64,000 nucleotides of DNA from Magallana gigas. Lineage: Eukaryota. Position 1 is the stretch's first letter; every line of letters begins with the position of its first letter. Both the position numbers and the translations under genes were made by a program. The stretch covers positions 41,974,001 through 42,038,000 of the forward strand of contig NC_088855.1 in assembly GCF_963853765.1 (NCBI RefSeq). Reading direction: 5' to 3'. Under the pieces are notes generated by a model. It saw only the letters and a program-made list of their open reading frames with translations, ran no database searches and had not been told where the DNA came from. This document shows, in pieces, positions 24,568-55,212 of the stretch.

Positions 24568-27500
24568 ATGGTGTTCCAAACGAAAGGACTAACATTCTAT
24601 GTGCTGGTAATTCTTGGCCTTATTGTCAGGAGTGATGCACAAGAATCGACTACTGAAACAAACAAAGCTGACCCACGTGCTTTTTTGAAATGCCCCACCG
24701 CGCGTGCAGCGACCTTTATGTACTTCTCGGACTCTTGGACCAGGGTCCCAGAGCCCAATACGGATTACGATTCTCTGAACTGTGGAAACGTCAAGGTAAT
24801 AATAACGTCATAGGAATGGTTAAGTGTTCGGGGTACAAACTAAACCACCCCCATATGTGTAGCTCGGGAAATATAAAAAAAGCCTTATTTACATGTGCAC
24901 TCATCATTGTTTCGGCAAAAGAGTTAATTTTTTACAAAGTGTTCGGACATAAACCGAAAAATTGATTGAAATCTAACATCGAAAAGATATCTTTGAACTA
25001 TTTCATTCAATTTCATTCCATTTCCAATGATTTTAGGGAACAACCGAATCATGGCAACTCTTATACCTAGTCTAAGTCAAAGCCCAAAAGTGCTATTATT
25101 TTACTAATACTTATTCATTCAGATACTCCGGTAAATCGTTAAGAGACCGCTGTAATGATATTTTCCATAACGTGCTCTACATGATTGGGCAATGCTAATG
25201 ATCTAGAAATCGGACTACCCCAGGGCATCCATCAATCAATTTTGGGAAGTGACTTGGTAGGACACACAACCTATTCAGTATGCGGGTACATGGTTTCATT
25301 GCTATAGAAGATCTAGACAAACGTTGTTCTTCAGCGCGACGCAAAAATTAGGCAAACATACCCAGATACCTGCGATTCGATGAAATGAATTGAAATTTTT
25401 CTACTATTTAATTTACATTACACTCTCTTTAAGATTTGCTTTACTTTACAACTAGTCTAATATAGAGAAGTTAAGTACAATGCAGGTGTTTAAAATATGT
25501 GTTCAAAGTCATATACATGCATGGACTTAAAGTATACACACGTATGTGAAAGTAAATTACATAATCATTATGTATATAAGAAAATATCAATGCCATGTTA
25601 GTATGATAATGCTATGTTAAATAATGCATGGAAACAATTTAAAAGCTTGGGGGACAATGACGACTACCAGTATATAGAATTGTTCTTCCTCCGAAGCCAA
25701 AAAAGCGGTGCGTCTGTGTTATCAATTAATCTAATAAATATGAAATAGTCTGAAAGAGTATACAAAATAATCTAAAAGAGTGTAAAATAATTTTAAAGAG
25801 TGCAAGTACTTTCTACTTTATGGTTTATAATTAAGCAAGTTGATAAAGTTCGGGTTGATTGTTTTACACATTACTTACCAAACATCCTCATTAATAAGTA
25901 GATGTGTTTAAACGGCTATAATATATGAAGGTAAATATTATAACATTAAAAATCTTTTTAAAAATATAAATCGAAAGTCAACATCTAATGTAAACACTAA
26001 ACAATGCCTTTCACTTGATGTCTCTAGATACCAAACGGAGATCTGGAAGGAAAATGCGGAGTATGTGGGGACTACTACAATGGACCCCGACACAATGAAG
26101 TTCCGAATGGAAAGTATGCCTCCATTCGATACCCCACCTATGTCTATCGGGAGGGCTCGGTCATTAACGTGACTGTAGAAGTATCTGAAAACGGCAACGG
26201 TGGATACTTCATGTTTAAGCTGTGTGACTCGGGCGATGCTCAACTCCAGGAAAAACAAAGCTGCTTCGACAACACGGTGCTTAGTCTAGCGAGGTCTCCA
26301 AACGTGAAGAAGATTTATGTTCCCAAGGTTAATGCCTCCAATGACATCGTGGTCCCCCTGCAGCTACCCGATGGCTTTGAGTGTAAACTGTGTACCATGC
26401 AGTGGACTTGGGTCACCAGTGAGTATAGGAGAACACACTACAGACTTAGCAGAATAAAGACAAAACACCATGGAATACTAGTATCTAAATACAACAGCCA
26501 AAAGAAATACCATATAATATTACACCCAGCATATTGCATAGAAAACATTATACATGTACATGTTGTCGGAACTAAAAAAACAAAACAAAAACAAAACAAC
26601 GACAAAAACAATACAGTATTTATAAAGAACAGATGCTACACGTTATTATGCATATTGAAGAAAATGAAATCATGTCTATAATAAAAGAAACCTCAATGCT
26701 GTATCATTATTAATCAGCCAGAATGTACAAAATGTTACCGAAGACAAACTTTTCTTTACAGATATTGATGTAGGATGTCAAGTGATTGAAGGTGAACGTA
26801 TTTGCGGACAAGGAATTGGTCCGCAGACGACTCTGGTCAACTGCGCCGACATCTCCATAATTTCAAAGTCCATCGATATTCCAGAAAGTTTTCCATGGCC
26901 AGATTTTACGTCTAAGTATGACAGCATGGCACATAAAGGTTAGATACTGGTATTGCATTGTCGGTTTGGCACGCACATTATAATTTTTGATTCCAAGATG
27001 TTTTTCTTCACCTGTTGTAACTTTTCAAATAGATGATGACCATAACAGAACAGCAGTGGACCCACCATTCCGTCCCCGAGTAATAGAGAGAATAAAGGAC
27101 GATGATACTCCAACCACCACAAAGAAACCACCACCCGTTCTTCCAGTGTTTCCAAAAATAGAAAACCCTTACAACGGAAGAAAACCCACAATACCAGACA
27201 TATCGGACAAACTGTTGAAACCCGATCAACCAGTCCCCGCCAAGAAGCCCAAACTAGACATTAGAGATTACAAGAAGACTTTTGGGGGGTTAGGTCTTGG
27301 ACTGTTGGAAATACTGCTCCCGGCGGGCCTTCTTCTGGGGTTCGGGGGGATGCTCTCTGACCGTCTGGAGGATCGACGCAGACTCAACGCACAACCAGGG
27401 TTCTTACTTAATGGTGGCGTCGGTCTTAGTCCGGTTGCTGCTGAACATGGAGTGTTAATTGGTGAGCAGATTTTACCCTTTGGTGCATCGGCAGCCGCCG

Positions 27501-28441
27501 CTGGGGGTCTTGCGGGTGGTGCTATCAGGACAGGAGTACCTGGTGCAGGTGCTGTACCGGTAGCTGGCCTCTCTCCAGTTGTCACTGGACTGGATTTCAA
27601 TGACGCGCAGCTTCAACAGATCATCCCGTTGATACCCATAATATCCACGCCAGAGGCACACCAATTGATTCCAAAGTCATTTCCGGACAGCAGTAGATTA
27701 GGTTACTTGATACCGCTAATTGTAGAACGAAGACGTCTTGTGCAAATCTTCCCGCATCTCACTCCCCACCAGATAACACAAATGCACCTGCAGTACAGAA
27801 CAATGCAGAGACAAGGACGAATAGGAGGCGGGATCCAGGGTCAAAATGGAATCAATGGCGCAAATCAAGGTCAAAATGGTTTTGGGGGCATTTCGCAAGG
27901 TCAAGGAGGTTTTGGCGGGTCTTTCCAAGGTCAAGGTGGAGTTGTAGGAGGGGCTAATATCAATGCCATTCAAAATGCCCAATATCAGTCCGGGAACCAA
28001 CAGTGGTATTCTAACAATGTCCAAACTAATCAGAATTCTAGGTTCTTTGAATTGCCCCAAGATCATTCATTTTCAACCGATATAAATAATATCAATTCAA
28101 CCAATTCTGGCTCAAGACCGTCACGTGGTGACATTGCTAACCCAGAATTTGAATTTGACAGAGAACCGGGTGTTTTGGTCGAAAGAGAGAGTCGCAAGAG
28201 AGTATCTCCTTACAGCGAAAATTGTCCACCTGAAAAGCAAATTTGTAGAAGTAAGTTTACCTCTAAAGAACCCACGATCTACGGGACCATTTCCATCATG
28301 GAGATGATCTGTGAACTTGAGTGTGAGGATGGGAAGCTTTCCTGTCCGGCGAATATTTGTATCTGCGCATGCCCAGAAGTTGACGACGCCTCGCTGTTAG
28401 AAATACTGGAATCCTTAGACGATCGGTCACGGGTGGCTTGA
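24568..28441 (+). CDS. Secreted AA15/LPMO-fold protein B, tandem paralog of A, also His-less, with Pro-rich and Gly/Ala/Gln-rich linkers and the same 8-Cys module, 734 aa. Exons 24568-24795, 26028-26418, 26762-26938, 27033-28441
   Basis: Signal peptide, then RAFLKCPTARAA, LNCG, GKCGVCGD, YREGSVINVTVEV, YFMFKLC, LQLPDGFECKLCTMQWTWVT and GPQTTLVNCAD. Intron positions and phases (0,1,1) are the same as in paralog A. 2205-nt open frame. Confidence 0.9.
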
Positions 28442-30690: not shown

Positions 30691-30922
30691 ATGGCGTTTG
30701 AAAAAATGGACTTTGTTTGTGTAATTGCTGTGATCTGTTTGTTTGGGGTCGTTGATGGCTTCAGCTTTGGTGCCCCAGAGGATTTCTGTCAATATGAGAA
30801 TCTCCAGGACCGGAACGTCAGAATGGTACCCGGACACAGAGGGGTGGATCCCATGAACACCCGGAGTCCGGCCGGATACCGGATCGTTGTGGGACCGGAA
30901 GAAGCCAAGGGTGCCAGAAAAG
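30691..30922 (+). CDS. Reeler-domain variable first exon V1 (signal peptide plus N-terminal half of the Reeler domain)
   Basis: MAFEKMDFVCVIAVICLFGVVDG|FSFGAPEDFC...MVPGH...YRIVV. Contains the Reeler GAPxxxC...H motif. Intact frame ending in phase-1 donor AAAG|GTAGAT. No downstream Reeler exons of its own were found. Confidence 0.8.
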
Positions 30923-33735
30923 GTAGATCACAACTGTTATTATTGCAAAAGTCATAAGTGTCTCATATCTTCAACATTCTTCATCTAGCCTTATCTCCAT
31001 ATCTCTTCTTTATTTGTATCATTCTTGCTTAACTTACCTGTGCATATTCTAATTCAACTATTAATTGGAGAAACAAGTAGCGAGCTATTTGTATTGTTCA
31101 GAATCAGTAAAATATCAAATCTAATAAAGGGTGGTGGGTTATTATTGATCAATTTAATCTCCTTTTAGAGACAATTATGTGGAAAAAAAAGATACAAATG
31201 TTACCATGGACCATTAGGAGTTTTTTTTCATGATAAATTATACTAACTGTCGTTCTTTTAAAAATAAGAATGAAAGAAAGTACAAGCAAATTTCTATAGT
31301 GAGGGATTTGAGAAACAGTTAATGGTTTCTCAGAAATGTTCAGTTGTTGAAAACTTGTATGCAAGTTCCTAAAGGTTTATGACCAAAAACTGTCTTTTTG
31401 CCGACACACCTTGCCAGTTGGTTCATGAGGACAAACAAGGCCCGAATTCTTGAACTCTACCTGTCAATTTAGCGACATTTTTGAACTGCTGTTGTCAGCT
31501 TAACTGTGTTTTTATGTGCGATGTGGTTTCTTCATCCCACGGACTCCCACGCCTGAATGACCGCTCGTCAAACCGCCAAAAACCGCCTGTCTGTATTAAT
31601 CCAGCAATATTTATGCAACAAGAGAAAAAAACACAAGTCTTTGCTTGATTATTTTACTACAAAGTAATTAGTTTCTCCATGACGTATTTTAAGGTTAAGT
31701 CTCAAATGACTTAGTTTAAATGGGGTTCAAAGATGAACAAGGGCATAAGGCGATATGACTGCAACAGACAGCAATGGTTTGTCCAAATCAAAATGCTTAC
31801 TTTGCCATAAAGGTCTAAGATATCTAGACATAATCACACAAGTCTCGTTATTAATGCATGTTAGGTTTAAAACGATATCGAACATGCATATGGTATGTCG
31901 ACTAGATAAAAACACGTGTTAACTTTTCCAGTGCGACATGGTCTATCTGATGGACCTCTCAAAGTTTTGGTTTTATGTACGATAAACTTCATTTTTCCAT
32001 TATGCTGAAATTTCGATTAAAATCATGATGTATAATTCCTCGTGTGCCTGTATTTTAAAAGTTCAAGTCTTGGTCATGTTGAATATACAACCGAATGACT
32101 CACGAAATTCTTTAAACTAGAACTCAGACAAGTTACATGTTCATCGAAAACAATTCAAGCAAACTGAATAATAAGCAATCTTGCTTTTATGAATAAACGT
32201 AGAACAATTTAGAAATAAATATATTCTCGTACAAATTAACACTGTACCTTCCTTACATATATACTACCTGGACGACGGTTCTACATTTTTAAGTAATTAT
32301 CCAAAAGCACCCATTGAAACCATAGCAACCCCGTACTTCACTTTCTAGACAAAACAAGTTCATATACTAGTACATGTACTCTGATACAACATTGCCTTAA
32401 AATCATAATTTATACATCTCAATTCAAACTTTACAGAAATTTACATATTTTTTAACTGTCCAAATAGGTAATATGCACTTAATATTGTAAATTGGATTAT
32501 TTTTTTTACCTCTGTGTACAATATCTAAATTATTGTTTCGTTTAATCACATTATTTAGAAAGACTCTTGAAAAAGTGAAAACATAATACGAATGCGAAAA
32601 CCGTTAGGTAAAACAAAAACGATATAAATTTTTCCATACTGAACTAAAATATGTGCCTTAAAAACATTGTGAATCAAAGATTGCAAAAAAGAAAATAAAA
32701 CAAATATAAATCGCCGATTTTATCAATGAAAAAGAAATTAATAGTATTTCTAAGTAATATAAATGAACACTATAGATACTAATAATATGGCAGGGAGTAC
32801 CTCTGACTCAATGAAAGTTAGATTGTTTGCATACCGGATACATTTCTAGCTAACCTGTTATTAATCATGCTTTTCTAAATTTCTCTGCAGAACTCTAGCC
32901 AAATTTACAGGTGTATTTGACAAAATAACTTACGATTATAGTATGTCCCATGTTACCAATTCCTAAAAAAAAATCGAGTCATAAGTATCTTTTTGTTTAC
33001 TCGATTCACTTTATAATAATGATATCAAATATAAAATTCTGTTAAATGAAACACTCCCACTCTCTCTAAGGTTGCAATACACGATCGATGATTGAAAATC
33101 TATTTGGAGTTTGCATTCGGAGAGACTTCCAAATGGAAAGAAGAAAAAAAGCATATTTCCAACAATAAATCCCCTTAAGAGATAGTCCTTTGAATTCTTT
33201 AGGTAAAAAAGAGAAAAATGTCTTCGACCCCCCCCCCCTCCCCCCCCCCCTTAAATCAATTTCATTTAACTTCTTTGAGAGGTACAAGAATGAGTATTTT
33301 CGTTGAAAATCACCGAAAAGTAGCTTAAACCTGCAATTTGCACTTTTATTTACTTAAATTGTATTTGTTGTTACTGTTGAAATACATTGCAGGCTTCTAA
33401 GATTCTTTACCTCGAAGTGAAGTTTTGAAATGCATTATATGTTACTTTCATATTTCAAAACAATATTTTGAGACCGAGATGCAAAATGCTTTCTAATGGA
33501 GGTCCAAAGTTATTGTTTCCGTAACATTTGGTCGATTTTTAATACTTCTATTTGATACACATACATGTGAAAAAAAGTGCTAATCGATGAAAGGAAAAAT
33601 ATTTAAAATTTCTTCATTAATTCATTATTATTTTTCACTGGGAAAAATTCAGATTTCTTACCGAGAATGCTACTGTATCATTTCTCCATTCGAAACTCAC
33701 ACGAATTACGTCCCACAATTTTTCAACGTTATCAT

Positions 33736-33785
33736 TAGGGTACTTTAAAGTCTTATACAATAGGGTACTTTAAAGTCTTATACAA
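33736..33785. repeat. Perfect 25-bp tandem duplication
   Basis: TAGGGTACTTTAAAGTCTTATACAA occurs twice in direct tandem. Confidence 0.95.
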
Positions 33786-36700
33786 TGCAAAATGCAATCA
33801 AATACAAAATCCCTGTTACTTTTTATCATGAGCTGAGTATTGAAACATGATAAGCTAGAAGGGCGTTCGAAAAAAAATCTATTTTTTTATATTTTTGAAT
33901 GAACATCGATTGAACCCTAAGGTATAATTGAGTAAATTGAAAATCGAAGATATATAAGGTGATTCATGCGGGTATGAAAGTAGCTATCATTGCAGAAAAA
34001 TATATTATTTTTTCTACAATATTGTATGAAAATTATTGTTATTGTTGATCAGAACGGTACACAAAAGGAACAGCCAATTAACCATATACGTGAAGGTTAC
34101 CATAGGAACAATTTTATGTCACTATCTTTAAAGCTCAAAGATTTTGATAGTATGAATATTCTTTATATTTGGAGTCTACCATAATCAGAAAGCAAGTTTT
34201 AGTCAGAGCTTGTAATAATGACAGCTTTTGAACAGAAATCCTTAACACACATTAGTTACACTGGTTCTTTGTGAATCCTGTCACAACATTCTACAATATT
34301 TGTAGTAACTGCTAGTTTGTTTAGAGTCTGTGATCCATTGGTTAATGGGATGGGGGTGGGGGGAGGGGGGGGGGGGGCTTTGGTCTCTGCATCAACAGTG
34401 CTCGTTGATGCTGAAGTCTGGTTTAGACAGGCCGAGGACTTAAATGGACATGGTCATGATTTAAGCTCAAAATTTTAAATTTATTTTTTATGGCAATACG
34501 AAGCTTGTTTGCTGTAGATTTAGATATAATAACAAATCAATTGAAAAACAAACTCCTCGATAGTGTGATGGTCATTTATTGTAATTTTTAAATGACTAGG
34601 TAAGGCTACATTTGTTTTAAACATAAAAGTACATGTACATCCGAATTGGATGGACATATGAAGAAGAAATCATCAAGAAGATGAGACATTCCAGATGCAT
34701 TGTATTTATGGATCATTATCCAATGGAAGAGTTGTAATTAATTTTTTAAAATTTGGCAAGAGCTACTTGCACCCATTGGTAGGTATTTGTCAAAATGATA
34801 TAACCCATTCCATTATTTCTTGTTCAAACCTGTTGCGTTTGTTATCCTATCGTTCAGCAAATGTACTTTGCTAGAGGTGGCCAGGTCTTGTCTTTGTCGG
34901 TAATCATGTTTTGAGAGTTGATGGCATATCTGAATGACACAACTTTTTAACCAAACTTTTGAACATCTCAAACTACTTTAAAATTCGACTCTTTCCATAT
35001 CGAGATGTCTCGAAGGCAATGAAAGTGACAAAGTCTTCTTCTTAATTCTATAAAAAATTTTGTAAACCATCTTAAGTAGCATTTTTTATTGGAATAATTA
35101 AATTACAATCTTGTAAGAATTTTGGAGTTACCTGGAAAATGAAGAACATAATCAATAATGCAATAATGTACGAATCTTTTACACACCGGAAATACACGAG
35201 TTTTTACTGTTATGTAATTGAACTAATGCCAAGACAACTTAGAAATCAACCAATTAATATGGCAGTAAAATATCAAGCAGTGTCAAGAAAAGGTACGAAA
35301 GCTTGTAGATGTATACGAGATTTATATGGAGTGCATAATTATTTCAGATATGCAGTTAGATTGTTTATGGTTGAAGTTTATGCGACAGATATACATGGCT
35401 AGAAAAACTATATCATGTTTCGTGACAAAAAGTAGACAACGATAAACTAGGTGTCAAAAGTTGTCGGCCCCTGAAAAACATATAGATGATCTACTTTATT
35501 GTGATTTGACCGTCTTTGTAATATCTTAGTGGAATGAAGGGGAATTCTGTCAACATAGTTGTTAACCTCATTTTGTAGAAGTATCATTTCTTCACTCTCA
35601 CACGCTGTTGTCGCATTGCATATTAAGGAGACTGGGTGGTTACCTATCTACCCGGGTCTACCTTAAAATTTTAGACATGATAATTTTAGACATAAATTGA
35701 CTTGTCATTTAGAAAAGAAATCTTCCAAATAGTATAGCTTAAAAATTTGGATGTTGTCTTAAATATATCAAAATTATATATTAAAAACAATGATTATTTT
35801 AATAAAAATAGCAGTGATTACAACATTATTAATAAAAAATGAATACGTTTTAATGAATTTAATTTCATACAATGTCATAGGCAAGACACGCTCCTTGATA
35901 CAGTAAGGGAGATTACTTGGCAAGAAAAATAGATAATAAAATCTTTATTGTATTAAAAAGATTTGCATGACTTGCATGGTTCTATGTTGGAACTTACAAT
36001 ATATCACTTTTTTAACTTCATGTCAATTGTAAAACTTCAACTTATACTAACGTAGCAAACGAGCACGGTACCTTTTGCTGTTAAAATGCCTCGCTCATTT
36101 AAAAGTTCACCGTTCTCTCGGGCAAGATATTTTTAAAAAGTTCAACAGAGACCCCTGTATTTACATAACTTTCATTGCCGTTTAAGATATGTGTATTCTT
36201 TATCCTTTTAATTGTTTTTTGTCATCTAGACAAAGATGATCGATGCCCAATGCATAACTTATCATAAACTGATTGAAATGTAATTGAAAACATATTTGAA
36301 CTTTGGTAGAGGAGGCGAGATTCTTTTAATGAAATTAATTCATAAATATCTAAGAAGATTAAATTGAGAATAAATCAAGATAAATGTATTTCATCGCATA
36401 ATTTGATTTCATTCAAAATAAGTTAAAGAAGTTTTACATTGGAAGATTTATTAGTAAGTTTCTGTGCATGACCCATTCAGATCTAATTTACGAGAGACAA
36501 AACAACCTAAAGTTGAACGTTGACTGGAAAATTTGAAGCAAAAATCATTTTGAGAGAAAACTAACTGCTGATTAAACCAACAAAGAAATTTCGACAGACA
36601 TTCAAACGCTAAAAATCTTTTATCTGACTTTTCTTTTTAAAAAGAGATTTAAGATCAGTATTCAAATCTGGTTATATATTGAATCAATCATAGATTTTTT

Positions 36701-37790
36701 TTTCCCCTGGTGATACATCATTTATGACGAGACGTGAAGAATAAGTGAAAGTAATTAAATAGACAACGCATGGTCTTTGTATCCGAAATCGTAAAGGCAG
36801 GATTTCTTGTCACCCCATTTGCTTGTTACTTGTGTGACGTCACTACAGAAAGAAAAAAGGTCCCACGCAGAAGAAATGACAAACGATTCATACTCAAAAG
36901 AAGGGAAATGACAACCGTTCTCTATATTTCCTGATTCAGTGTGAATTCAAAAAGAGGTGCATTTTGAAATGCAAATAAACAAACAAATTATAACCAAATT
37001 AAATGTCATTTTACGTGTTTCTTTCAAATTATAGAAATGGATATTTCCTTTACTTTTTTTGTGGCAATGGTCTGAATTTAATATAACGACAAGTTCATTA
37101 ACAAAAAGGTTTTCCCCATTCATTCCAAAATAACATTGGAAATTTTTATATAAAGCTGTAATTCTAACAAGAAAGTTCTGAACAAGTTACTGTCCTTCTC
37201 TGAAGCTTGCAAACTATTGAATAATAATTTGAGCGTTATTTTTAGACAACTTGCGGGGTCAATTTTCTATTTTCATAAACGAATATTCTTTGTTTATGAA
37301 TAGTTGCGTAAAACCAAATTTTCTTGCCGACCAATTCCATTTTTTTTTATCTGGTCCATCCATCATTCGTTCCAAAGTGTACTAAGCGGTCCAGAGATAA
37401 AGGTTACCAAACCAACTGTAAAGATCTTACAATAACCATATAGCAGCCATTAATGGCCGACCGTAACGGAACAGCGCGGCACACGGGTCCTTGTTTGGCC
37501 AGATAGTGACGTTTATACATCGGAGTCATTGTTTTCATCCCTCTCTCTTCTTTGAACCGTGCGACATTTTTCGTCAATCACCCGCTCTCTTATTACCTCC
37601 CTGTCTCACATGACGGGCCCGTTGATTGACAAGTCGATATCATGTCATTGGCATATTTATGTCGGGCTTGTTAATTAATGACAGCTAAAACGACTTCTCT
37701 TGACCTAACCACGTGATCCTTATGCCATCTTTCTTTTCTTTCTCTTGAAATTATTAAGAACCCCCTTTGACACTGAAATCGTTATCCAAA

Positions 37791-38049
37791 ATGGCCGGAT
37801 TTCAATTCCTATCAGGACTGGTGCTTTTCTCTGTGACCGTTTCTGTTTATTCGTTTATCATTGGAGCCCCACCGGACACCTGTGGAAATCCGACCACTTT
37901 CCATACGGAACCGCTAAATGAAACTCACGTTGGACAATATTTGGCTCAGAATTCCTCCACGGCGCCCTATAAAGTGATAATTGACACGAAATTCTATGAA
38001 AATGAAACGTATAGTAAAGTTCTTGGAAAACCACACAATCGAGTCAGAG
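37791..38049 (+). CDS. Reeler-domain variable first exon V2
   Basis: MAGFQFLSGLVLFSVTVSVYS|FIIGAPPDTC...FH...QNSSTAPYKVII. Intact frame ending in phase-1 donor AGAG|GTACGT. No downstream Reeler exons of its own were found. Confidence 0.8.
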
Positions 38050-41000
38050 GTACGTATATTTGACCCAGACCATCATTTTTTTTTTTTCAAATTAAAGGTT
38101 TTTCAGTCATATAAATATTGCATAAACAATGATCTTGCGTTAGGCGTTATTCACTTCTTCACCTGAGAGTACAGTATGAATTTTGTAATTCAGTTTTGTC
38201 GGTTGTCTGTCAATGATTTTATATAAAGTTAGCAAGGTGCACATTCTTAAACTTGAATAAACACAAGTGCTTGGAAGTTTCTCCAGACCAAGTGAGGTGA
38301 CATTGATTTATAAACTGTTACAGCTGAAAGCCAATTAAAAGGTGATTTATTTTATCATTATACAAATTTGATATAAAAATAAGCATCGCAATCCAGATAT
38401 ATCTTTTTATTTAATCAAAGGGCCGGTCAAATGTGGGATCTCTAATTAACTGAGAAGGTGCTATATGTAGGAGTTTAATTCAATTTCGTGGCTAATTATT
38501 TTTTGAGTTTCTGTATTTAAAATGAATTATAACTAAAGCGTAAATGTTGAGCAAGGACCATAAAACTATCAATACAATACAATAATCTGCCCTCTTATTA
38601 TTGTAAATTCCCGATTTTGAAAAAAAAAACACCTTTTATTTGGTCATTTAGCAAAATCTTCTGCTAGTGACGTCATTGACGGGAAACAATGCATTGTCCA
38701 GACCGGTTTTTGTCAGTCGTGACGACGCGTAAAATGACAAATGTCTAGTTTGACCTATTGTGACCTGGGGTGAAGAGTCATTTTATAACTAGCCTTTTAT
38801 GACTATGACGTTTTCATGTTACATGTATAGTACTGGGCTTCCACAGTTGCATAAAACCAAATTTAATGTGTTTGTCAGTTGGACACATTTTGAATTTTTC
38901 GCCGAGTTTTCTATTTTTCTGCAATACGAACTCGAAACAAGTTAAGAATTACAGAATCCATTCAAAAGAGAAAAGATACATTGGATTTTTAAAATCTTTT
39001 CCATTAAAAAAGATGTCAAAGAAAAATATAAGCAATATATTTATATTACGCGTTTAACCAAAACGTACAAAATTACAACTTTTCATGAAAAAATTATAGA
39101 ATAGAAACTAAAAAATATGCTTTCAGGACCAGCGAAATAATAATTTTATAATTATTCACTTTTTGGATACCTTTTTTCTCTAGCAAATTCAGCAAAATAT
39201 ATTGAAAGAATTTTAAAGATTTTCTTTGTCAATTTAAAGTGAACAATCTTCCACACTGGTCATTGATAGCATTTGTTGTTGTTATTGTTGTTGTTGTTTT
39301 ATTGTCTAAAATATCAAATATATTGAATCCAAAATCGAAAGAGTTTTTAACTAACATGAGAATGTTTTTTTTTTTAAATTTGAATTAAAGATATGTACAA
39401 ACTCTTCTTTTTTTTTAAATATAGGATCTTGTGATTCAAAACACTTCTTTTGCAACATATAACTCTTTAAGCTTCTCATAGCGCAAAGTGTTCTACCAAA
39501 ACATGTTTTCTGCACTGCCTTAACATTTTAAATTAAATTAGTTTGTGTGATGGTAAAAAATCAATCAAATTAAACAATGAACGACAAATAGACTTTATTT
39601 TAATAAACGAGAGGGGAGATCAACAAATACCAAACAGTTTTAGCATACAGATATATAGTTGCAGGGCTGTAGATCTACCGAAAAAGCCGCACAGTAGACC
39701 TATACAATTTGTTTTAAAGAAAAACTTGCAACTTACGGTGAACTAAGTCGTACGCCAGTTTTGGTCTGATTAACCTAATATCATTATCTTTGATCTTTGA
39801 TTAGCGAGATTCTTCAAAAATATTCAGAAAGTGAAGCATGTTAAATTCACGTGCAGGTCCATGTTTCATTTCACCTGTAAACAAACCACACTTCTTTCCT
39901 CACCTTACGTGGCTAGTGTAGGCATTGAAAATAATTTCAATTGCTATTCAAAAGTATTACCCCTAGTAGTGAAATGTGTAACGATATTTTTTACCACATT
40001 GATACCACAATACCAAATACTACCACAAAATGTTTTTTGTACGAAAATTGGGAAGTCCAAAACGCAAACTTTTGTGCGCCCTTGAATTGTTAATATAGTT
40101 TGAACTGCACCTCTAAAGCTAAATTTTCCCGTAAAGCGTCAGAAATGCGGCTAAAAGATATGTCATGCGCCGATCGGGGGGGGGGGTCGGGTGGCTCAGA
40201 CCACCCCCCGGCAAAATTAAATATCTTGCTTGCTTGTAAATTTGTCATATGTTTACTTTTTGACAAAATTCATACACCCCCCCCCCATAAAAAAAAAATT
40301 AATATTTTTACAATCAAAATTTATTTACTGTCGCAGCATGCGTTGAGCCAAGCCTCCATAATTATATATATTCAACTGCTATACCATTTAATAAAATATT
40401 TTAATCAGTTTTGCTATTCCTGACAAATTCAGTTAAATTTGGAGTTGAACAGTTCATATTGAATCGATAAATAAATTCATGCAATCACGTTATATTTCAA
40501 TATTAATGAGATAAATTGACAAGAGACACCCAATTTTGACTGAAATGAGCACACATACTCTGTGTGAATGACAGACAAAATCTTAACAAGACCTTTACAA
40601 GATCCAATTAACATTTTTCTTTGCCACCGATGAAAACTTTGATAAGTAATTTATTGGTCAGACAGCGAGTAAGCTATAAATTTTAGCATCTTTCTGTGGT
40701 AATGAGGTGTTTTTATGAATTCCTTTTAGCATGTTAAGTCATGACATTGTCGCCTTTAGAGAAATATAGAAACCACTAGTCAAGTAATTATGATATCGAC
40801 TGGCAATTGATTCTTTGCTGAAAATATGCATCTTGTGAAATTGAAAACCGCAGCAAGCTTTCATTTTGAGCTTGTGAATAAATATGATCATTTATCATTT
40901 AGGCGTGTGTAACTGTTATGCAGAGTGAACGCTTCTTGATTTGTGCATTGATTTATATGTGTGGAACAAGAGGGCAGCTACCATTCAGGGAGCGCATATT

Positions 41001-41787
41001 TGGCGCTTTATATGAACATGTATTTCTGGCCAAGTTAAAAATAACTTCGTACAAAATACTCAGAAAAACCATAAAATGCAATAAAGTCTAGTTGAAAAGA
41101 ATAAACAATATGGGCATAAAAGCAAATTGATATAAAATATTCATCTGTATTTGTTCCTAAACAAATTTATTATCAATAAAGATACTTTTGCGTTGTTTTA
41201 AAGTAATAATAAATTCAAATTTCAAAGCAACAAAATGAGATGAAAATGCGTAAAAGCGAAATGCAATAGTGGGAAACCTTGCAAAACCCCAATATATCGT
41301 GATAATTAATATACCGCAAATATGATATTTTCTTTATTGTGGCCACAACAAATAAATAAGAGGAAAATAAAACAATACAGGTTGCTTGTAACGAGGTGTA
41401 AAATACGTCAACAAATATATATCAAGGAAACATTCCCGAAAAAAAAACTATAAAAAAGTAACAATTCCCCCTCTAACAACGTGTTAACAGGTGTTTGTGT
41501 GGGCTATTGTCAATATCGTGCAATTATACATTTGTTAAATTGATAAACAGGGATATTTATATACATGGATTAAGTGCGCTGATATTAAAGCAATAACTAC
41601 TCTCCGACAGCCGAATGTCCCAGGAATCCAACTATAGTGATAGAATCATAAATCAGGGGGTTTATGACCGCTTGTCTTCGCCATAGTATGCTAGCCATGT
41701 CATTAAAGAATGCCTAAGTAACTGTACATTGCATGTTTATATTTCGTTGACAATAAGTTGCACGAAGATTTAATATTCAAAGAAGAG

Positions 41788-43671
41788 ATGCTTTTTGGAA
41801 TCGTGCTATTTTCATTTTCACTTTTGGATATAAGTTTTGGATTTCCCGGTGGTGCTCCTCATAATTCGTGTCCGGACCCAGCCCCAATTCACCAGAGGCG
41901 TATAAACTCTACCCATGTTGGTATTTTTTTCCCTCAGAGTATGGCCACTAGTCCATACCAAATAACGACTTCAGCATCTCGTTATTTCAATGGGTCTATG
42001 ATTAGAGGTAGGCTAAATTGTTGACACTGGTACTTTTTTGTTGTTTAAGAATTGATACGTTTCATGTAAATTGATTTTATGCATGCATATTATAGTAGAG
42101 TATTTTTGTTGAGTTTTTTTCAAAGTTGAATGTAAATGTATCAGGTATTATATAGTCTTTAGAGATAGTAGTTTTGGTCTGTAGCTTTTAAATTCATTTT
42201 AACAATAGGAAACGTTGTGCTTATTAAGCATTTGTAGAATATATATTTCTTGATTCATCGTTATACTAGTATATTACAACAGCAAGTCCGACAAAAAATG
42301 TGTTTGTACATGTTTACCCCTAGGGTAAAACACTATGGGTGACATTTGTGCAACGTGCATGTGTTTCTGACAACATAACACCGTTATCCCGCCATCGATC
42401 AATGTCTCCGACGCGCCCTCGCCACTGACAGATATGTTACTAAACAAAACGTTTTTGTAATTCTAATGTCCAAGCAATGCACGCCATTCCTTGACATCGT
42501 GTTGTGGTCAGTCTAATAAATGCGTCCTTTCCAAAATAGATATGGCTGTTTGTTATGGTTACATTTGGCCACAATATTACACCGAAGAAGACACAAACTG
42601 AATATTCATTTTTTTCCAAAAAAATATTTAAAATCATTTTTATTCACTTGATTCATAAGAAAAAACCAAATATATTATCTATACGGTTCCTCTTCTCTTA
42701 AACTAGTAATATACATTTGGGTAGCTTTTGAGAAGTTTTATTTTTGTAAAGTGGAAATATCATACCATGTACGGAAACAATCAGGACAATCCGATTTCAT
42801 CCCAAAGATGGTTGTATACTAGTATGTTTGAAAAGAAATCGTGTTTCCATTCTAACTACTAGTACTACATCCCTTTTTCCACGGGTTAACGGTATTGTGA
42901 AATGTTACAAACGTCTTAGACAAAATACATTCTTTTGTTGTAGGGTTTTGTATTCAACAATTTCTCTTTTCTTTTCAGTGACATTAAGGGCAGACCCCGG
43001 CGATTATTTCCGCGGTTTCTTCATCCAGGCTACACGAGCAAACTATGCCTTGGACCGTGGAGACAGACCCGCCTATGGAACTTTCCGTCCGGCCGATACC
43101 AACTCACAGCCTCGTAGATGTCGCTCTGCAGTAGGCAAAGTAGGAGGCATAACTCACACCGGAAATAACAACAAAACAGAGATCTCGTTCGACTGGGAAC
43201 CACCAAGGGGATGCAATCTGGGTGACATTCAGTTTGTGTAAGTAATAAAAAAAGACGTTATACAGTGGATATATCAAAATTAAATGAGCTCAGCAAGAAA
43301 TTAATAATTTTGTGTTGTTGGATTTTTAGTGCTACCGTCGTGAGAGCTTACAGTGAATACTGGGTTGACGTTAGATCTGACGTCATCGCACCATCCGGCT
43401 TTGTCGGTAAATATTTTTTTGCTTTAGGAACAGAATTTGAAACTATGTCTTCAACTGAATACATGTTAATATATTGGAAATAATTTTATTACGATTTAAC
43501 CTTTAAAATCCATTTTTAACAGGTGACCGAGGACTACTATGCCAACTTTACGTTAATCCATACAGCAAAATTTTGCAAAGGCGTGTGCTTAGTGCTCTAA
43601 GAAACATTCAAACCATGCAGCAGAGTCGACGTACCGGGGGGACCGCCGGCACACTCTCTACCCAGGGCTGA
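41788..43671 (+). CDS. Reeler-domain secreted protein (defense-protein-like): first exon V3 41788-42007 plus constant exons 42979-43237, 43330-43406, 43523-43671; 234 aa
   Basis: Signal peptide, then FPGGAPHNSC...IH...PYQI|VTL...YFRGFFIQA...GTF...C...GGITH...KTEISFDWEPP...IQFV|VATVVRAYSEYW, all Reeler hallmarks. Phases 1,2,1 give a 705-nt open frame. Confidence 0.9.
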
Positions 43672-45161
43672 ATTGAAAATTCTCCGTCACCAACTGTTAA
43701 CCAAATGAATCGACGCTAAAAACTGACGTTGTAGCATCTCATTTATGCTTTTTTTTTTAAAGAAAGATTTCTGATGAATTTTTATGGGGCGTTTAACTCG
43801 ATTCGTTTGCTGTATTGCACATATAATAAGTGGGGTAATAAATATTCAGAAAGTATTTCAGTTCCTATCATTTCTCATTTCGGTTTTTTTTATATGGAGA
43901 AGTGAATCTACCTCTTGAAATATTTCCACAGTAACCTTATGTGTGTGATGTTTATTTCCCACGGTGTTTGCTCATTATGAGCGGATTCAGCTAGAGTTTT
44001 GTAGCTCTTTTTTCTTCTTACCAACAACTTTGTAATATACGCTTTATTTTTTCCTTTTCCCAACTTTCTTTTCTTTCCATGTGATTTGGTTTTGTATCGT
44101 GTGCGTGTGTAAATATTTTCAAATAAAAACATGTCGTAGAATTATGCGTTATTTATATCCGTTAATTCAAAACCACTAAACAATAATATTATATGTAACA
44201 CTAAGATTCAATCTGAATCATGGGCTATATTGCAATATTAAAAACAATATGCCAACAGTTTAGCATCGTTTTAAAATGTAAAATATTTCTATATATTTTT
44301 TTATTAAGATGGGAGTATATCAGCATACGTAATAAAATTAATTCTTTCAAAGATCAGTTTTACAAATTCCTGCTAAAATTTGTTGCAGCAGAAACGAATA
44401 CGGGTGATCTATTTAGTCCAGAGAGATTTCAATTGATAGAAGGTTATAATACGCACAAGAATGTTTATAAGTATATTTTATATATCAATGAACATAATAG
44501 ATGTAGGTAATAATACAGTAAACATTCTATTCTTCATTCGTAAAACCGAATCAAAGAAAAAGATAGGCGAACTAATACTTAGAAGTAAGTTAAAAAATAA
44601 TTAAATTGACTTTGAATAAAGTTTAACCGCAAAGGTGAGTTAAAAATACGCCAAAAAAATATTAATAAAACCTACTCCTTAGATTAGTGACCGTATGCAT
44701 AACAGATGTAATTTTTTCAAGGATATAAGATAAATTTAGAACTTTTAAATAATAAAGTTCTTAAGAGCGAATGAATATAATGATTCAATTAGGATTATTC
44801 ATCAATATGATATCCTCCATCAGTTATGTCCAGAATTCCAACACTGACAGTAATGACGACATCTACATTGTTCACACGGTTATGTACAGACATACGTGTA
44901 CAGAAATTCAATCCGCTCAATATCAATCACTAGATGGTAAATGTATATAGCAATGTGAATGAAGAGAAAGCTGCCCGAAACTGCTTGGTATCAAAATCTT
45001 CTACTTTATACAAAGCATTACTTATAATAATTTGAAAATTCAAAAGTATCTACAAAAACACACACTAAGAAATTTGTTCAGAAATTACCATACAGTATCT
45101 AAATACATTTATCTATACTTATAAAAAATCAATAACCTATGATATTATGTCATGAGAAATT

Positions 45162-54740: not shown

Positions 54741-55212
54741 GCATTGATTTTATTGCAATGAAATCAATCAGCAAGAAAAGATTATTTTTTATTTAAACTT
54801 TGTAGATGCTTTCCAACCTGTGGGTTTCACAGCTTGTTTAACGAGGGACAAATCTCTTGGGATTTTGCAGACGATAATATATGACAACGTCATCACAAAC
54901 GTTGGCAATACGTACGACTCACGTCACGGTATTTTTCGGGCACCAGTGAAAGGTCTCTACCATATGACGTTGACATCAATTTCCTATTATGGTAGCGAGC
55001 TTTTTGTGGAGATGGTTAAAGACGGACAAAGAATAACTCATACGTACAGCGGAAGTAAGGACTTTCAATCGTCTTCTGCTTCCGTTAATGTAGTGTTAGA
55101 AGCAGGAAATGATGTCTGGTGTCGTCGTTACCAAGGCGCCAGCACAGTGACAATCAATGCGCAATACAGCGGAACATGTTTTTCGGGATTTCTTTTAAAC
55201 CATATGGTTTGA
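54492..55212 (+). CDS. Secreted C1q-domain-containing protein (signal peptide, short coiled coil, globular C1q domain), 200 aa. Exons 54492-54687, 54806-55212
   Basis: Heptad segment IRSLHQELNTLRRDYNNVLSELANIRKSL. gC1q motifs VGFTACL, IIYDNVITNVGNTYDSRHGIFRAPVKGLYH, LEAGNDVW and FSGFLL. Phase-1 GT-AG intron. Confidence 0.92.
54699..54736. repeat. (TC)19 microsatellite in the C1q intron
   Basis: Uninterrupted TC run. Confidence 0.95.

What the first reader, a model, noticed from the sequence alone, without database searches (positions are those of the whole stretch)
30691..43671. Reeler-domain gene with an array of interchangeable first exons (variable/constant architecture)
Seen: three separate exons (30691-30922, 37791-38049, 41788-42007) each have their own ATG, a signal peptide and the N-terminal half of a Reeler domain with conserved GAPxxxC and His. 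They are highly divergent elsewhere, all intact, and all end in a phase-1 donor (K/R-G|GT). I found only one copy of the C-terminal half of the domain: exon 42979 onward, with a phase-1 acceptor. I found no FRGFFIQA/ITH/FDW-like exons at 30923-37790 or 38050-41787. Each first exon would splice in frame to 42979. Established: clustered protocadherins and UGT1A use promoter-choice variable exons joined to constant exons, and small Reeler proteins act in insect immune defence. Inference: one locus makes three secreted Reeler isoforms by swapping half of a single folded domain, possibly as a small diversified recognition or matrix repertoire. I do not know of this layout for Reeler genes.
Basis: partly seen in the sequence, partly recalled or inferred. 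Interest (0 to 1): 0.9.

Follow-up and report, generated by a model that had tools for sequence, protein, structure and literature searches.

The report
Oyster Reeler gene, three first exons
An oyster gene for a small secreted Reeler-domain protein makes three forms by joining one of three old, tandemly duplicated first exons to the same later exons; scallops and mussels share the layout and databases already predict it there.

Summary
V1 (30691-30922), V2 (37791-38049) and V3 (41788-42007) each carry an ATG, a hydrophobic leader and GAPxxxC...His, and each ends in a phase-1 G|gt donor. The window holds only one set of downstream exons (42979-43237, 43330-43406, 43523-43671). It has no N gap.

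The main interpretation is supported by transcripts. Contigs from public RNA-type runs carry 38049^42979 (three runs, two studies) and 42007^42979 (one run). In two runs a 255-nt overhang at the same acceptor matches the 3' end of V1 at 29 of 30 bases.

Two points need correcting:
- The V exons supply about one third of the Reeler fold, not half.
- This is not a fast-diversifying repertoire. There are three ancient classes, found in the same order V1-V2-V3-constant in the scallop Argopecten (four V exons). Mytilus shows V2-V3-constant, with a V1 isoform known as protein only. Every V exon checked has the same AGA-G|gt boundary.

Scallop and mussel RefSeq records already list the isoforms, but I found no paper describing them. 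Earlier unchecked scan notes report similar first-exon sets in other genes of this genome, including STBD1 nearby.

Own promoters, tissue use and biochemical function were not tested. Verdict: a real, ordinary-to-moderately interesting new member of a known architecture.

The parts
30691..30922 (+). V1 first exon, coding part: ATG, leader, GAPEDFC...PGH, no N-glycosylation sequon; phase-1 donor AAAAG|gtagat
   Evidence: The V-HMM scores it at E 8e-19. The 255-nt loose end at the C2 acceptor in runs X2 and X3 matches 30891-30920 with one mismatch, and this is the only such match in the window. Orthologues are P0004-P0008, P0010/11, P0014/15 and P0043; the class forms a 100/100 split in the tree.
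37750..38049 (+). V2 first exon: at least 41 nt of 5'UTR collinear with the genome, coding 37791-38049; three N-x-S/T sequons; donor AGAG|gtacgt
   Evidence: The joint 38049^42979 (GT..AG) appears in X1 (1305-nt contig, depth 20.6), X2 (11.2) and X3 (2833). The V-HMM gives E 6e-22. It is 59% identical to scallop V2 by tblastn.
41452..42007 (+). V3 first exon: 5'UTR reaching at least 41452 (a TATATAT stretch lies about 30 nt upstream), coding 41788-42007; two N-x-S/T sequons; donor AGAG|gtaggc
   Evidence: An X3 contig covers 41452-42005 at depth 650 and the joint 42007^42979 is seen. The sequence is shown. The V-HMM gives E 4e-23. It is 56% identical to scallop V3.
42979..43237 (+). Constant exon 2 (phase 1 in, phase 2 out): the core of the Reeler domain (FRGFFIQA, GGITHTG, FDW)
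   Evidence: Pfam PF02014 gives E 4e-11 over profile positions 42-118. It is the only copy in the window. It is 97-98% identical in other oysters, 78% in scallops and 70% in mussels.
43330..43406 (+). Constant exon 3: the last strands of the Reeler domain (ATVVRAYSEYWVDVRS)
   Evidence: The joint 43237^43330 is seen in X1, X2 and X3. The constant-part HMM gives E 2e-10.
43523..43671 (+). Constant exon 4, coding part: conserved Cys plus a basic predicted helix, stop TGA at 43669-43671; the 3'UTR continues beyond
   Evidence: The joint 43406^43523 is seen in X1-X3. In the Pinctada orthologue model the matching tail is helical (residues 205-235; pLDDT by block mostly 82-89, falling to 72 in the last block).

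Best explanation
This is a single gene for a small secreted protein: a signal peptide, one Reeler domain and a roughly 50-aa basic helical tail. It has three alternative first exons.

Each V exon carries its own start codon, its own leader and the first third of the Reeler fold, including the invariant GAP, Cys and His. Each ends in the same phase-1 donor. Transcription that starts at one V exon gives a pre-mRNA in which that exon's donor is joined to the first available acceptor, at 42979. Downstream V exons are skipped, most likely because as first exons they have a donor but no acceptor.

The result is three proteins of 238, 247 and 234 aa. They share about 160 C-terminal residues and differ in one face of the beta-sandwich and in glycosylation: V1 has no sequon, V2 has three and V3 has two.

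The exons arose by tandem duplication of exon 1, probably together with its promoter, before oysters, scallops and mussels diverged. They have been kept as three distinct classes since.

Shown here: the exon structure, the three splice junctions, the single constant set, and orthology and collinearity in other bivalves.

Inferred: separate promoters, skipping through lack of acceptors, a disulfide between the V Cys and the invariant constant-part Cys, and different ligand or tissue roles for each isoform.
For: - Exons, phases and frames.
- Junctions: V2^C2 in three runs from two studies, V3^C2 in one run, and C2^C3 and C3^C4 in all three.
- V1: the loose end at the C2 acceptor equals the V1 3' end, 29/30 bases, and this match is unique in the window.
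- No joint between V exons was reported inside 37750-43700, and the V3 5'UTR is collinear with the genome for 336 nt.
- Only one constant set and exactly three V exons in the 64 kb; no N gaps.
- Argopecten locus L001: V1a, V1b, V2, V3, then C2-C4, matching RefSeq isoforms X4, X3, X1 and X2, which have identical constant parts.
- Mytilus locus L002: V2, V3, then C2-C4; a V1 isoform is P0043.
- All the V exons checked end AGA/CGA-G|gt.
- Exons cluster by class, not by species: V1 100/100, V3 82/89.
- The Dreissena relative has one V exon and the same intron.
- Reeler identity: Pfam 77 bits for the whole V1 isoform. The model of the V2-type Pinctada orthologue aligns to the F-spondin reeler domain at Z 13.2, rmsd 2.9 A, 126 residues, model range 51-197. 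That range spans the exon boundary at 89/90.
- Invariant residues lie on both sides of the boundary (G27, A28, P29, C33, H49 | C125, H137...).
Against: - The transcript evidence comes from assembled contigs, which cannot show starts, strand or abundance. Only X1 is on record as RNA; for X2 and X3 the RNA label is a guess.
- The one raw-read run (X20) had no reads on the exons.
- V1^C2 rests on a 30-nt consensus of an overhang, because V1 lay outside the 6-kb stretch that could be laid.
- Whether the joined forms also exist as DNA (retrocopies) was not reported (table 5b).
- No transcription start data exist, so separate promoters are an inference.
- The upstream regions of the three V exons share no detectable sequence, so no common regulatory element was found.
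- In both structure models the first 25-30 mature residues of the V part have pLDDT below 50. The proposed Cys pairing and surface differences are therefore not established.
Confidence: 0.85

Rival explanations
1. V1 and V2 are relics of decayed tandem gene duplicates. They are pseudo-exons whose own downstream exons were lost, and only V3 + constant is the real gene.
For: Only one constant set exists. V1 is very divergent from V2 and V3, at 20-27% identity.
Against: V2^C2 is the best-supported junction in all three runs, and the V1 end is joined to the same acceptor. All three ORFs are intact. Each class is conserved in scallop and mussel with the same donor. The variants in V2 and V3 are synonymous.
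Confidence: 0.03
2. The three V exons are mutually exclusive internal exons spliced from a shared, unseen upstream non-coding first exon under one promoter, in the manner of Dscam, rather than promoter-choice first exons.
For: No transcription start data exist. The 5' ends of the V1 and V2 transcripts were seen for only about 25 and at least 41 nt upstream of the ATG.
Against: The V3 transcript is collinear with the genome for 336 nt upstream of its ATG at high depth, with coverage dropping at 41452 and a TATA-like stretch about 30 nt upstream. No loose ends or joints enter V2 or V3 from upstream within the laid stretch.
Confidence: 0.08
3. The alternative exons matter only for regulation, giving three promoters for three tissues or stages. 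Under this reading the protein differences are functionally neutral.
For: Runs differ in which V they contain: X1 has V2 only, while X3 has all three. Core residues (GAP, Cys, His, Tyr) are the same in all classes.
Against: Class-specific sequence is conserved far beyond the shared core across oyster, scallop and mussel. V2 is 60% and V3 63% identical to the scallop versions, against 35% between V2 and V3 within the oyster. The N-x-T-H sequon is kept in V2 and V3 and absent in V1.
Confidence: 0.2

Closest known systems
Variable-first-exon / constant-exon genes (clustered protocadherins, UGT1A)
   Same: A tandem array of paralogous first exons, each with its own start codon and a donor but seemingly no acceptor. 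All are spliced to one shared set of downstream exons, and the order is conserved across species.
   Different: There are only 3-4 V exons. Each encodes a leader plus a third of one small domain, rather than whole domains. No conserved promoter element was found upstream of the V exons. Promoter choice was not demonstrated, and nothing suggests stochastic or combinatorial use.
Dscam1 exon 4 and 6 clusters (mutually exclusive exons encoding half Ig domains); stated from my own knowledge
   Same: Alternative exons replace part of a single beta-sandwich domain while the rest of the fold stays constant.
   Different: Dscam uses internal mutually exclusive splicing with docking and selector RNA structures and dozens of variants. 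Here the exons are first exons and there are three fixed classes.
Small arthropod Reeler proteins (Noduler, Bombyx Reeler1, PcReeler PMC10149183, LvReeler1-3 PMC12113285, tick PIXR PMC5543126)
   Same: A signal peptide plus a single Reeler domain, secreted. RefSeq names the bivalve proteins 'putative defense protein 3' by similarity.
   Different: In those species, separate genes encode the different proteins. No immune induction or microbe binding was tested for the bivalve gene. The bivalve protein also has a conserved basic helical tail.
Mollusc shell-matrix Reeler proteins (Crepidula SMP1, PMC12277549; Haliotis shell Reeler proteins, PMC6003135)
   Same: Secreted mollusc proteins with a signal peptide, a Reeler domain and a tail. 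SMP1 also has an exon junction about 100 nt into the Reeler domain.
   Different: SMP1 is reported as gastropod-restricted with a low-complexity tail. No alternative first exons are described for it. Presence of the oyster protein in shell was not tested.
FRRS1 / ferric-chelate reductase 1 (the RefSeq name for some isoforms)
   Same: The N-terminal Reeler domain.
   Different: There are no DOMON or cytochrome b561 domains. The protein is 234-247 aa and has only PF02014, so the reductase name is a similarity artefact.

Membership tests
Reeler domain (Pfam PF02014) | Sequence match to the family HMM above the curated cutoff | tested here: met
   C2 alone scores 44 bits against a cutoff of 21. 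The near-identical V1 isoform P0004 scores 76.9 bits over profile positions 3-131.
Reeler domain (Pfam PF02014) | The beta-sandwich fold of the solved F-spondin reeler domain | tested here: met
   The model of the V2-type orthologue P0009 (mean pLDDT 78) matches 2zot_C. Foldseek gives probability 1.0 and TM 0.66. VIA-align gives Z 13.2, rmsd 2.9 A, 126 aligned residues. The model was built on the Pinctada orthologue, not the oyster protein itself.
Variable/constant alternative-first-exon architecture (Pcdh/UGT1A type) | Tandem homologous first exons, each with its own ATG | tested here: met
   The V-HMM gives exactly three hits. V2 against V3 has E 1e-11.
Variable/constant alternative-first-exon architecture (Pcdh/UGT1A type) | Each variable exon spliced to the same constant exons | tested here: met
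   The joints 38049^42979 and 42007^42979 are seen directly. The V1 3' end appears as an overhang at the same acceptor.
Variable/constant alternative-first-exon architecture (Pcdh/UGT1A type) | Each variable exon has its own promoter and transcription start | tested here: inconclusive
   The V3 5'UTR is collinear for 336 nt, and depth ends at 41452 downstream of a TATA-like stretch. Contigs cannot show starts, and there are no data for V1 or V2.
Variable/constant alternative-first-exon architecture (Pcdh/UGT1A type) | A conserved sequence element shared by the variable-exon promoters (as in protocadherins) | tested here: not met
   blastn among the 1-kb flanks of V1, V2 and V3 gives only chance-level hits of 12-35 nt.
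Arthropod-type Reeler immune proteins (Noduler/Reeler1/PcReeler) | A secreted single-Reeler protein | tested here: met
   Each V exon has an N-terminal hydrophobic leader, and the models show N-terminal helices. Reeler is the only domain found.
Arthropod-type Reeler immune proteins (Noduler/Reeler1/PcReeler) | Induction by infection and binding to microbes or microbial polymers | not testable with these tools
   The run metadata are coded, and no infection series could be laid.
FRRS1 (ferric-chelate reductase 1) | Reeler + DOMON + cytochrome b561 domains | tested here: not met
   Only PF02014 is found in P0004, P0009 and P0012, which are 238-248 aa long.

The most novel reading that the evidence does not exclude
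The three (in scallops four) V thirds give one Reeler scaffold three hard-wired, differently glycosylated binding faces. Each would be tied to the constant part by a disulfide across the exon boundary and expressed from its own promoter. Pteriomorph bivalves would then have kept a small fixed 'V-C' recognition or matrix-assembly set since before oysters, scallops and mussels diverged (an early Palaeozoic split, from my own knowledge). That would make it a tractable natural experiment in exchanging part of a folded domain.
Probability: 0.3. Interest if true: 0.6.

Novelty: new member of a known kind. Interest (0 to 1): 0.45.

Why it matters
The work shows that 'putative defense protein 3 / ferric-chelate reductase 1' of oysters, scallops and mussels is not one protein. 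It is three or four anciently fixed isoforms that differ in a third of the Reeler fold. Expression, knock-down or proteomic studies that count the gene as a single entity, or design probes in the first exon, will miss or confound isoforms.

It also gives a clean, deeply conserved example of exchanging part of a beta-sandwich domain through alternative first exons. Finally, it adds to earlier, unchecked notes from this scan describing tandem paralogous first exons in other genes of this genome.

Tried and rejected
- **Hidden constant exons behind V1 and V2.** tblastn at word size 2 and E up to 100 and a family HMM on all six frames found nothing above noise.
- **A fourth V exon in the oyster, like scallop V1b.** tblastn with scallop and mussel V exons and the V-HMM found none.
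- **DNA-level repeats or promoter similarity among the V regions.** None found.
- **Genes or transposon ORFs inside the long introns.** No Pfam hits and only one small tandem repeat.
- **An apparent V3-like stretch directly upstream of scallop C2.** It proved to be a BLAST extension through stop codons.
- **Fetching the Ostrea edulis locus by protein P0006.** Not on record.
- **The raw-read polyA run X20.** It had no reads on the exons, so it gave no strand or start information.
- **Literature searches** for Reeler + oyster, Reeler + alternative first exon, 'defense protein 3' + bivalve, and ferric-chelate reductase 1 + Crassostrea. None turned up a description of this gene structure.
- **Structure models of the V-specific N-terminus.** Confidence was too low (pLDDT below 50) to compare surfaces or confirm a disulfide.
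- **Oyster V2 and V3 isoforms.** I did not type the spliced oyster proteins into any tool, so they were not folded themselves.
Full report
**1. What is in the sequence**

- V1 (30691-30922), V2 (37791-38049) and V3 (41788-42007) each open with ATG and a hydrophobic leader.
- Each continues with GAPxxxC and a His (PGH in V1, N-x-T-H-V-G in V2 and V3) and stays open to a G|gt donor in phase 1.
- The downstream exons are C2 42979-43237, C3 43330-43406 and C4 43523-43671. I corrected the C2 donor to 43237|gtaagt.
- All three V + constant joins are in frame and give proteins of 238, 247 and 234 aa.
- The window has no N run.

C2 alone matches Pfam Reeler at positions 42-118 of 131 (E 4e-11). A full V1-type isoform matches positions 3-131. 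The V exon therefore supplies about the first third of the domain plus a GAPxxxC extension, not half.

**2. Is there really only one constant set and only three V exons?**

Yes, within this 64-kb window.
- tblastn at very permissive settings finds C2, C3 and C4 only at their own positions. The next best hit has E 0.24.
- I built HMMs from 24 family members and ran them over all six frames with filters off. The constant-part HMM hits only C2 (E 4e-43) and C3 (E 2e-10), and the next hit has E 3.5.
- The V HMM hits exactly V3, V2 and V1 (E 4e-23, 6e-22, 8e-19), and the next hit has E 0.64.
- V2 and V3 are clearly related (35-37% identity, E 1e-11). V1 shares little beyond the core motif.
- No nucleotide similarity survives between the three exon regions or their flanks. 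The long introns hold no recognisable genes.

**3. Transcripts**

I laid window 37750-43700 on three contig sets from RNA-type runs and on one raw polyA run.

| Junction | Evidence |
|---|---|
| 38049^42979 (V2-C2, GT..AG) | X1: one 1305-nt contig running V2-C2-C3-C4, depth 20.6. X2: depth 11.2. X3: depth 2833 |
| 42007^42979 (V3-C2) | X3: depth 650, on a contig collinear with the genome back to 41452 |
| V1-C2 | X2 and X3: a contig ending at the C2 acceptor carries 255 further bases that do not lie on the stretch |
| C2-C3 and C3-C4 | Seen in X1, X2 and X3 |

The 30-nt consensus of that overhang matches 30891-30920, the 3' end of V1. It has one mismatch (AAG>AAT), and no other place in the window matches within six mismatches.

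No joint links one V exon to another. Intron coverage is only 3-6x.

Caveats:
- These are contigs, so they cannot show starts, strand or abundance.
- Only X1 is on record as RNA; for X2 and X3 the label is a guess.
- The raw run had no reads on the gene.
- The V1 junction is seen only through the overhang, because the tool's 6-kb limit could not span both V1 and C2.

**4. Relatives**

C2 is 97-98% identical in Saccostrea, Ostrea and Crassostrea virginica, 78% in scallops and 70% in mussels. RefSeq already lists several isoforms per species, named 'putative defense protein 3' or 'putative ferric-chelate reductase 1'.

The four Argopecten irradians isoforms share an identical constant part and differ only in the first exon. 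Exon positions in the two loci I mapped:

| Locus | V exons | Constant exons |
|---|---|---|
| Argopecten L001 | V1a 10001, V1b 11257, V2 15887, V3 24389 | C2 27664, C3 28933, C4 29285 |
| Mytilus edulis L002 | V2 1567, V3 10001 (the V1 isoform P0043 must start further upstream) | C2 12885 onward |

- The order V1-V2-V3-constant matches the oyster. Every V exon in both species ends (A/C)GA-G|gt, as in the oyster.
- tblastn of each scallop and mussel V exon against the oyster window hits the same-class exon best: 51/41% for V1a/b, 59% for V2 and 56% for V3.
- In a maximum-likelihood tree of the mature V parts, exons group by class and not by species. V1 is a 100/100 split and V3 has 82/89 support. 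V2 is unresolved at the base of the V2/V3 side.
- Between oyster and scallop, V2 and V3 are 60-63% identical and V1 about 40%, against 76% for the constant Reeler part. Among oysters V1 is 67-75% identical against 95-98% for the constant part.
- The variants seen in the RNA contigs in V2 (two), V3 (one) and C4 (two) are all synonymous. The one in V1 is K>N.
- A more distant relative in Dreissena has one V3-like first exon and no other V within 10 kb upstream. It has exactly the same phase-1 intron, AGA-G|gt...ag|TG-ACG.

The intron is therefore older than the array. The array most simply arose by tandem duplication of exon 1 before oysters, scallops and mussels diverged. From general knowledge, that is an early Palaeozoic split.

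**5. Structure**

- AlphaFold models were made for the near-identical oyster V1 isoform P0004 (mean pLDDT 66.5) and for the Pinctada V2 isoform P0009 (mean pLDDT 78.1). Both give a confident constant part and C-terminal helices. Both have pLDDT below 50 for the first 25-30 mature residues of the V part.
- The P0009 model matches the F-spondin reeler domain. Foldseek gives probability 1.0. VIA-align gives Z 13.2, rmsd 2.9 A and 126 residues over model residues 51-197.
- That range runs across the exon boundary at residue 89/90. The V exon therefore supplies strands of the sandwich itself.
- Invariant residues sit on both sides of the boundary: G-A-P, Cys33, His49 and Tyr63 in V; Cys125, His137, Trp175 and others in the constant part.
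- Cys33 and Cys125 are invariant in all 15 sequences, which fits a disulfide across the boundary. This is an inference.
- Cys156 and Cys196 occur together in pteriomorph proteins and are missing together in the more distant relatives P0025 and P0040.
- V1 has no N-glycosylation sequon. V2 has three and V3 two, including a class-conserved N-x-T/S-H.

**6. How it most likely works**

One V exon is transcribed from its own start. Its donor then pairs with the only acceptor available downstream, at 42979, and any later V exon is removed with the intron. This is the logic of protocadherin and UGT1A variable exons.

Shown: the junctions, the absence of V-V joints in the laid stretch, and a 336-nt collinear 5'UTR for V3 whose coverage stops at 41452, downstream of a TATA-like stretch.

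Not shown: transcription starts for V1 and V2, and what governs the choice of exon.

**7. Function**

Function is unknown.
- Small Reeler proteins act in antibacterial defence and microbiota control in arthropods (PMC12113285, PMC10149183, PMC5543126).
- Reeler proteins also occur in mollusc shell matrices (PMC12277549, PMC6003135).
- The strong conservation of the constant part, and of each V class, argues for fixed rather than fast-evolving partners.
- The 'ferric-chelate reductase' name is not justified, because the protein has no DOMON or b561 domain.

**8. Novelty**

- The architecture is a known kind.
- The isoforms are already modelled in RefSeq for related species.
- Earlier notes from this scan, which I did not check, report similar paralogous first-exon sets in other genes of this genome: STBD1 just upstream of this window, and PDK, Arp3, PI4K2 and a K2P channel.
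- I found no paper that describes this Reeler gene structure.

I rate it a real and well-conserved new member of a known kind, of moderate interest.

Noticed in passing
window 26987-28441 (+): A 484-aa uninterrupted ORF, Gly/Gln-rich with a Cys-rich C-terminus and no Pfam hit. It lies 2.2 kb upstream of V1 and may be another secreted or matrix-type gene.
   Followed up: no
window 54820-55212 (+): An exon encoding a complete C1q domain (PF00386, E 9e-22).
   Followed up: no
   Followed up: no
window 43523-43671 (C4 exon): The tail after the Reeler domain is a conserved Cys followed by a strongly basic predicted helix. Almost all pteriomorph orthologues retrieved end in Gly (..TQG..QQG..RRG..AG; one Logan sequence of unknown species does not). 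Cys156 and Cys196 are present together in pteriomorph proteins and absent together in the distant relatives P0025 and P0040. It may serve oligomerisation or polyanion binding.
   Followed up: partly
window 42883-42978: A minor GT..AG joint, 42883^42978, skipping 94 nt, in run X3 at depth 6. It is a cryptic donor in the V3-C2 intron that uses the same acceptor.
   Followed up: no
L001 10001-11490 (Argopecten irradians): Scallops have two V1-class exons 1 kb apart (V1a and V1b, 51% identical). Both are also present in Mizuhopecten, so this is a further duplication of V1 that the oyster window lacks.
   Followed up: partly
L003 10001-13808 (Dreissena polymorpha): A distant relative with a single V3-like first exon and the same phase-1 intron. 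Its C2 equivalent is split into two exons, and it has a long His-rich tail (HDHGHPDHDH) also seen in Mya and Mactra.
   Followed up: partly
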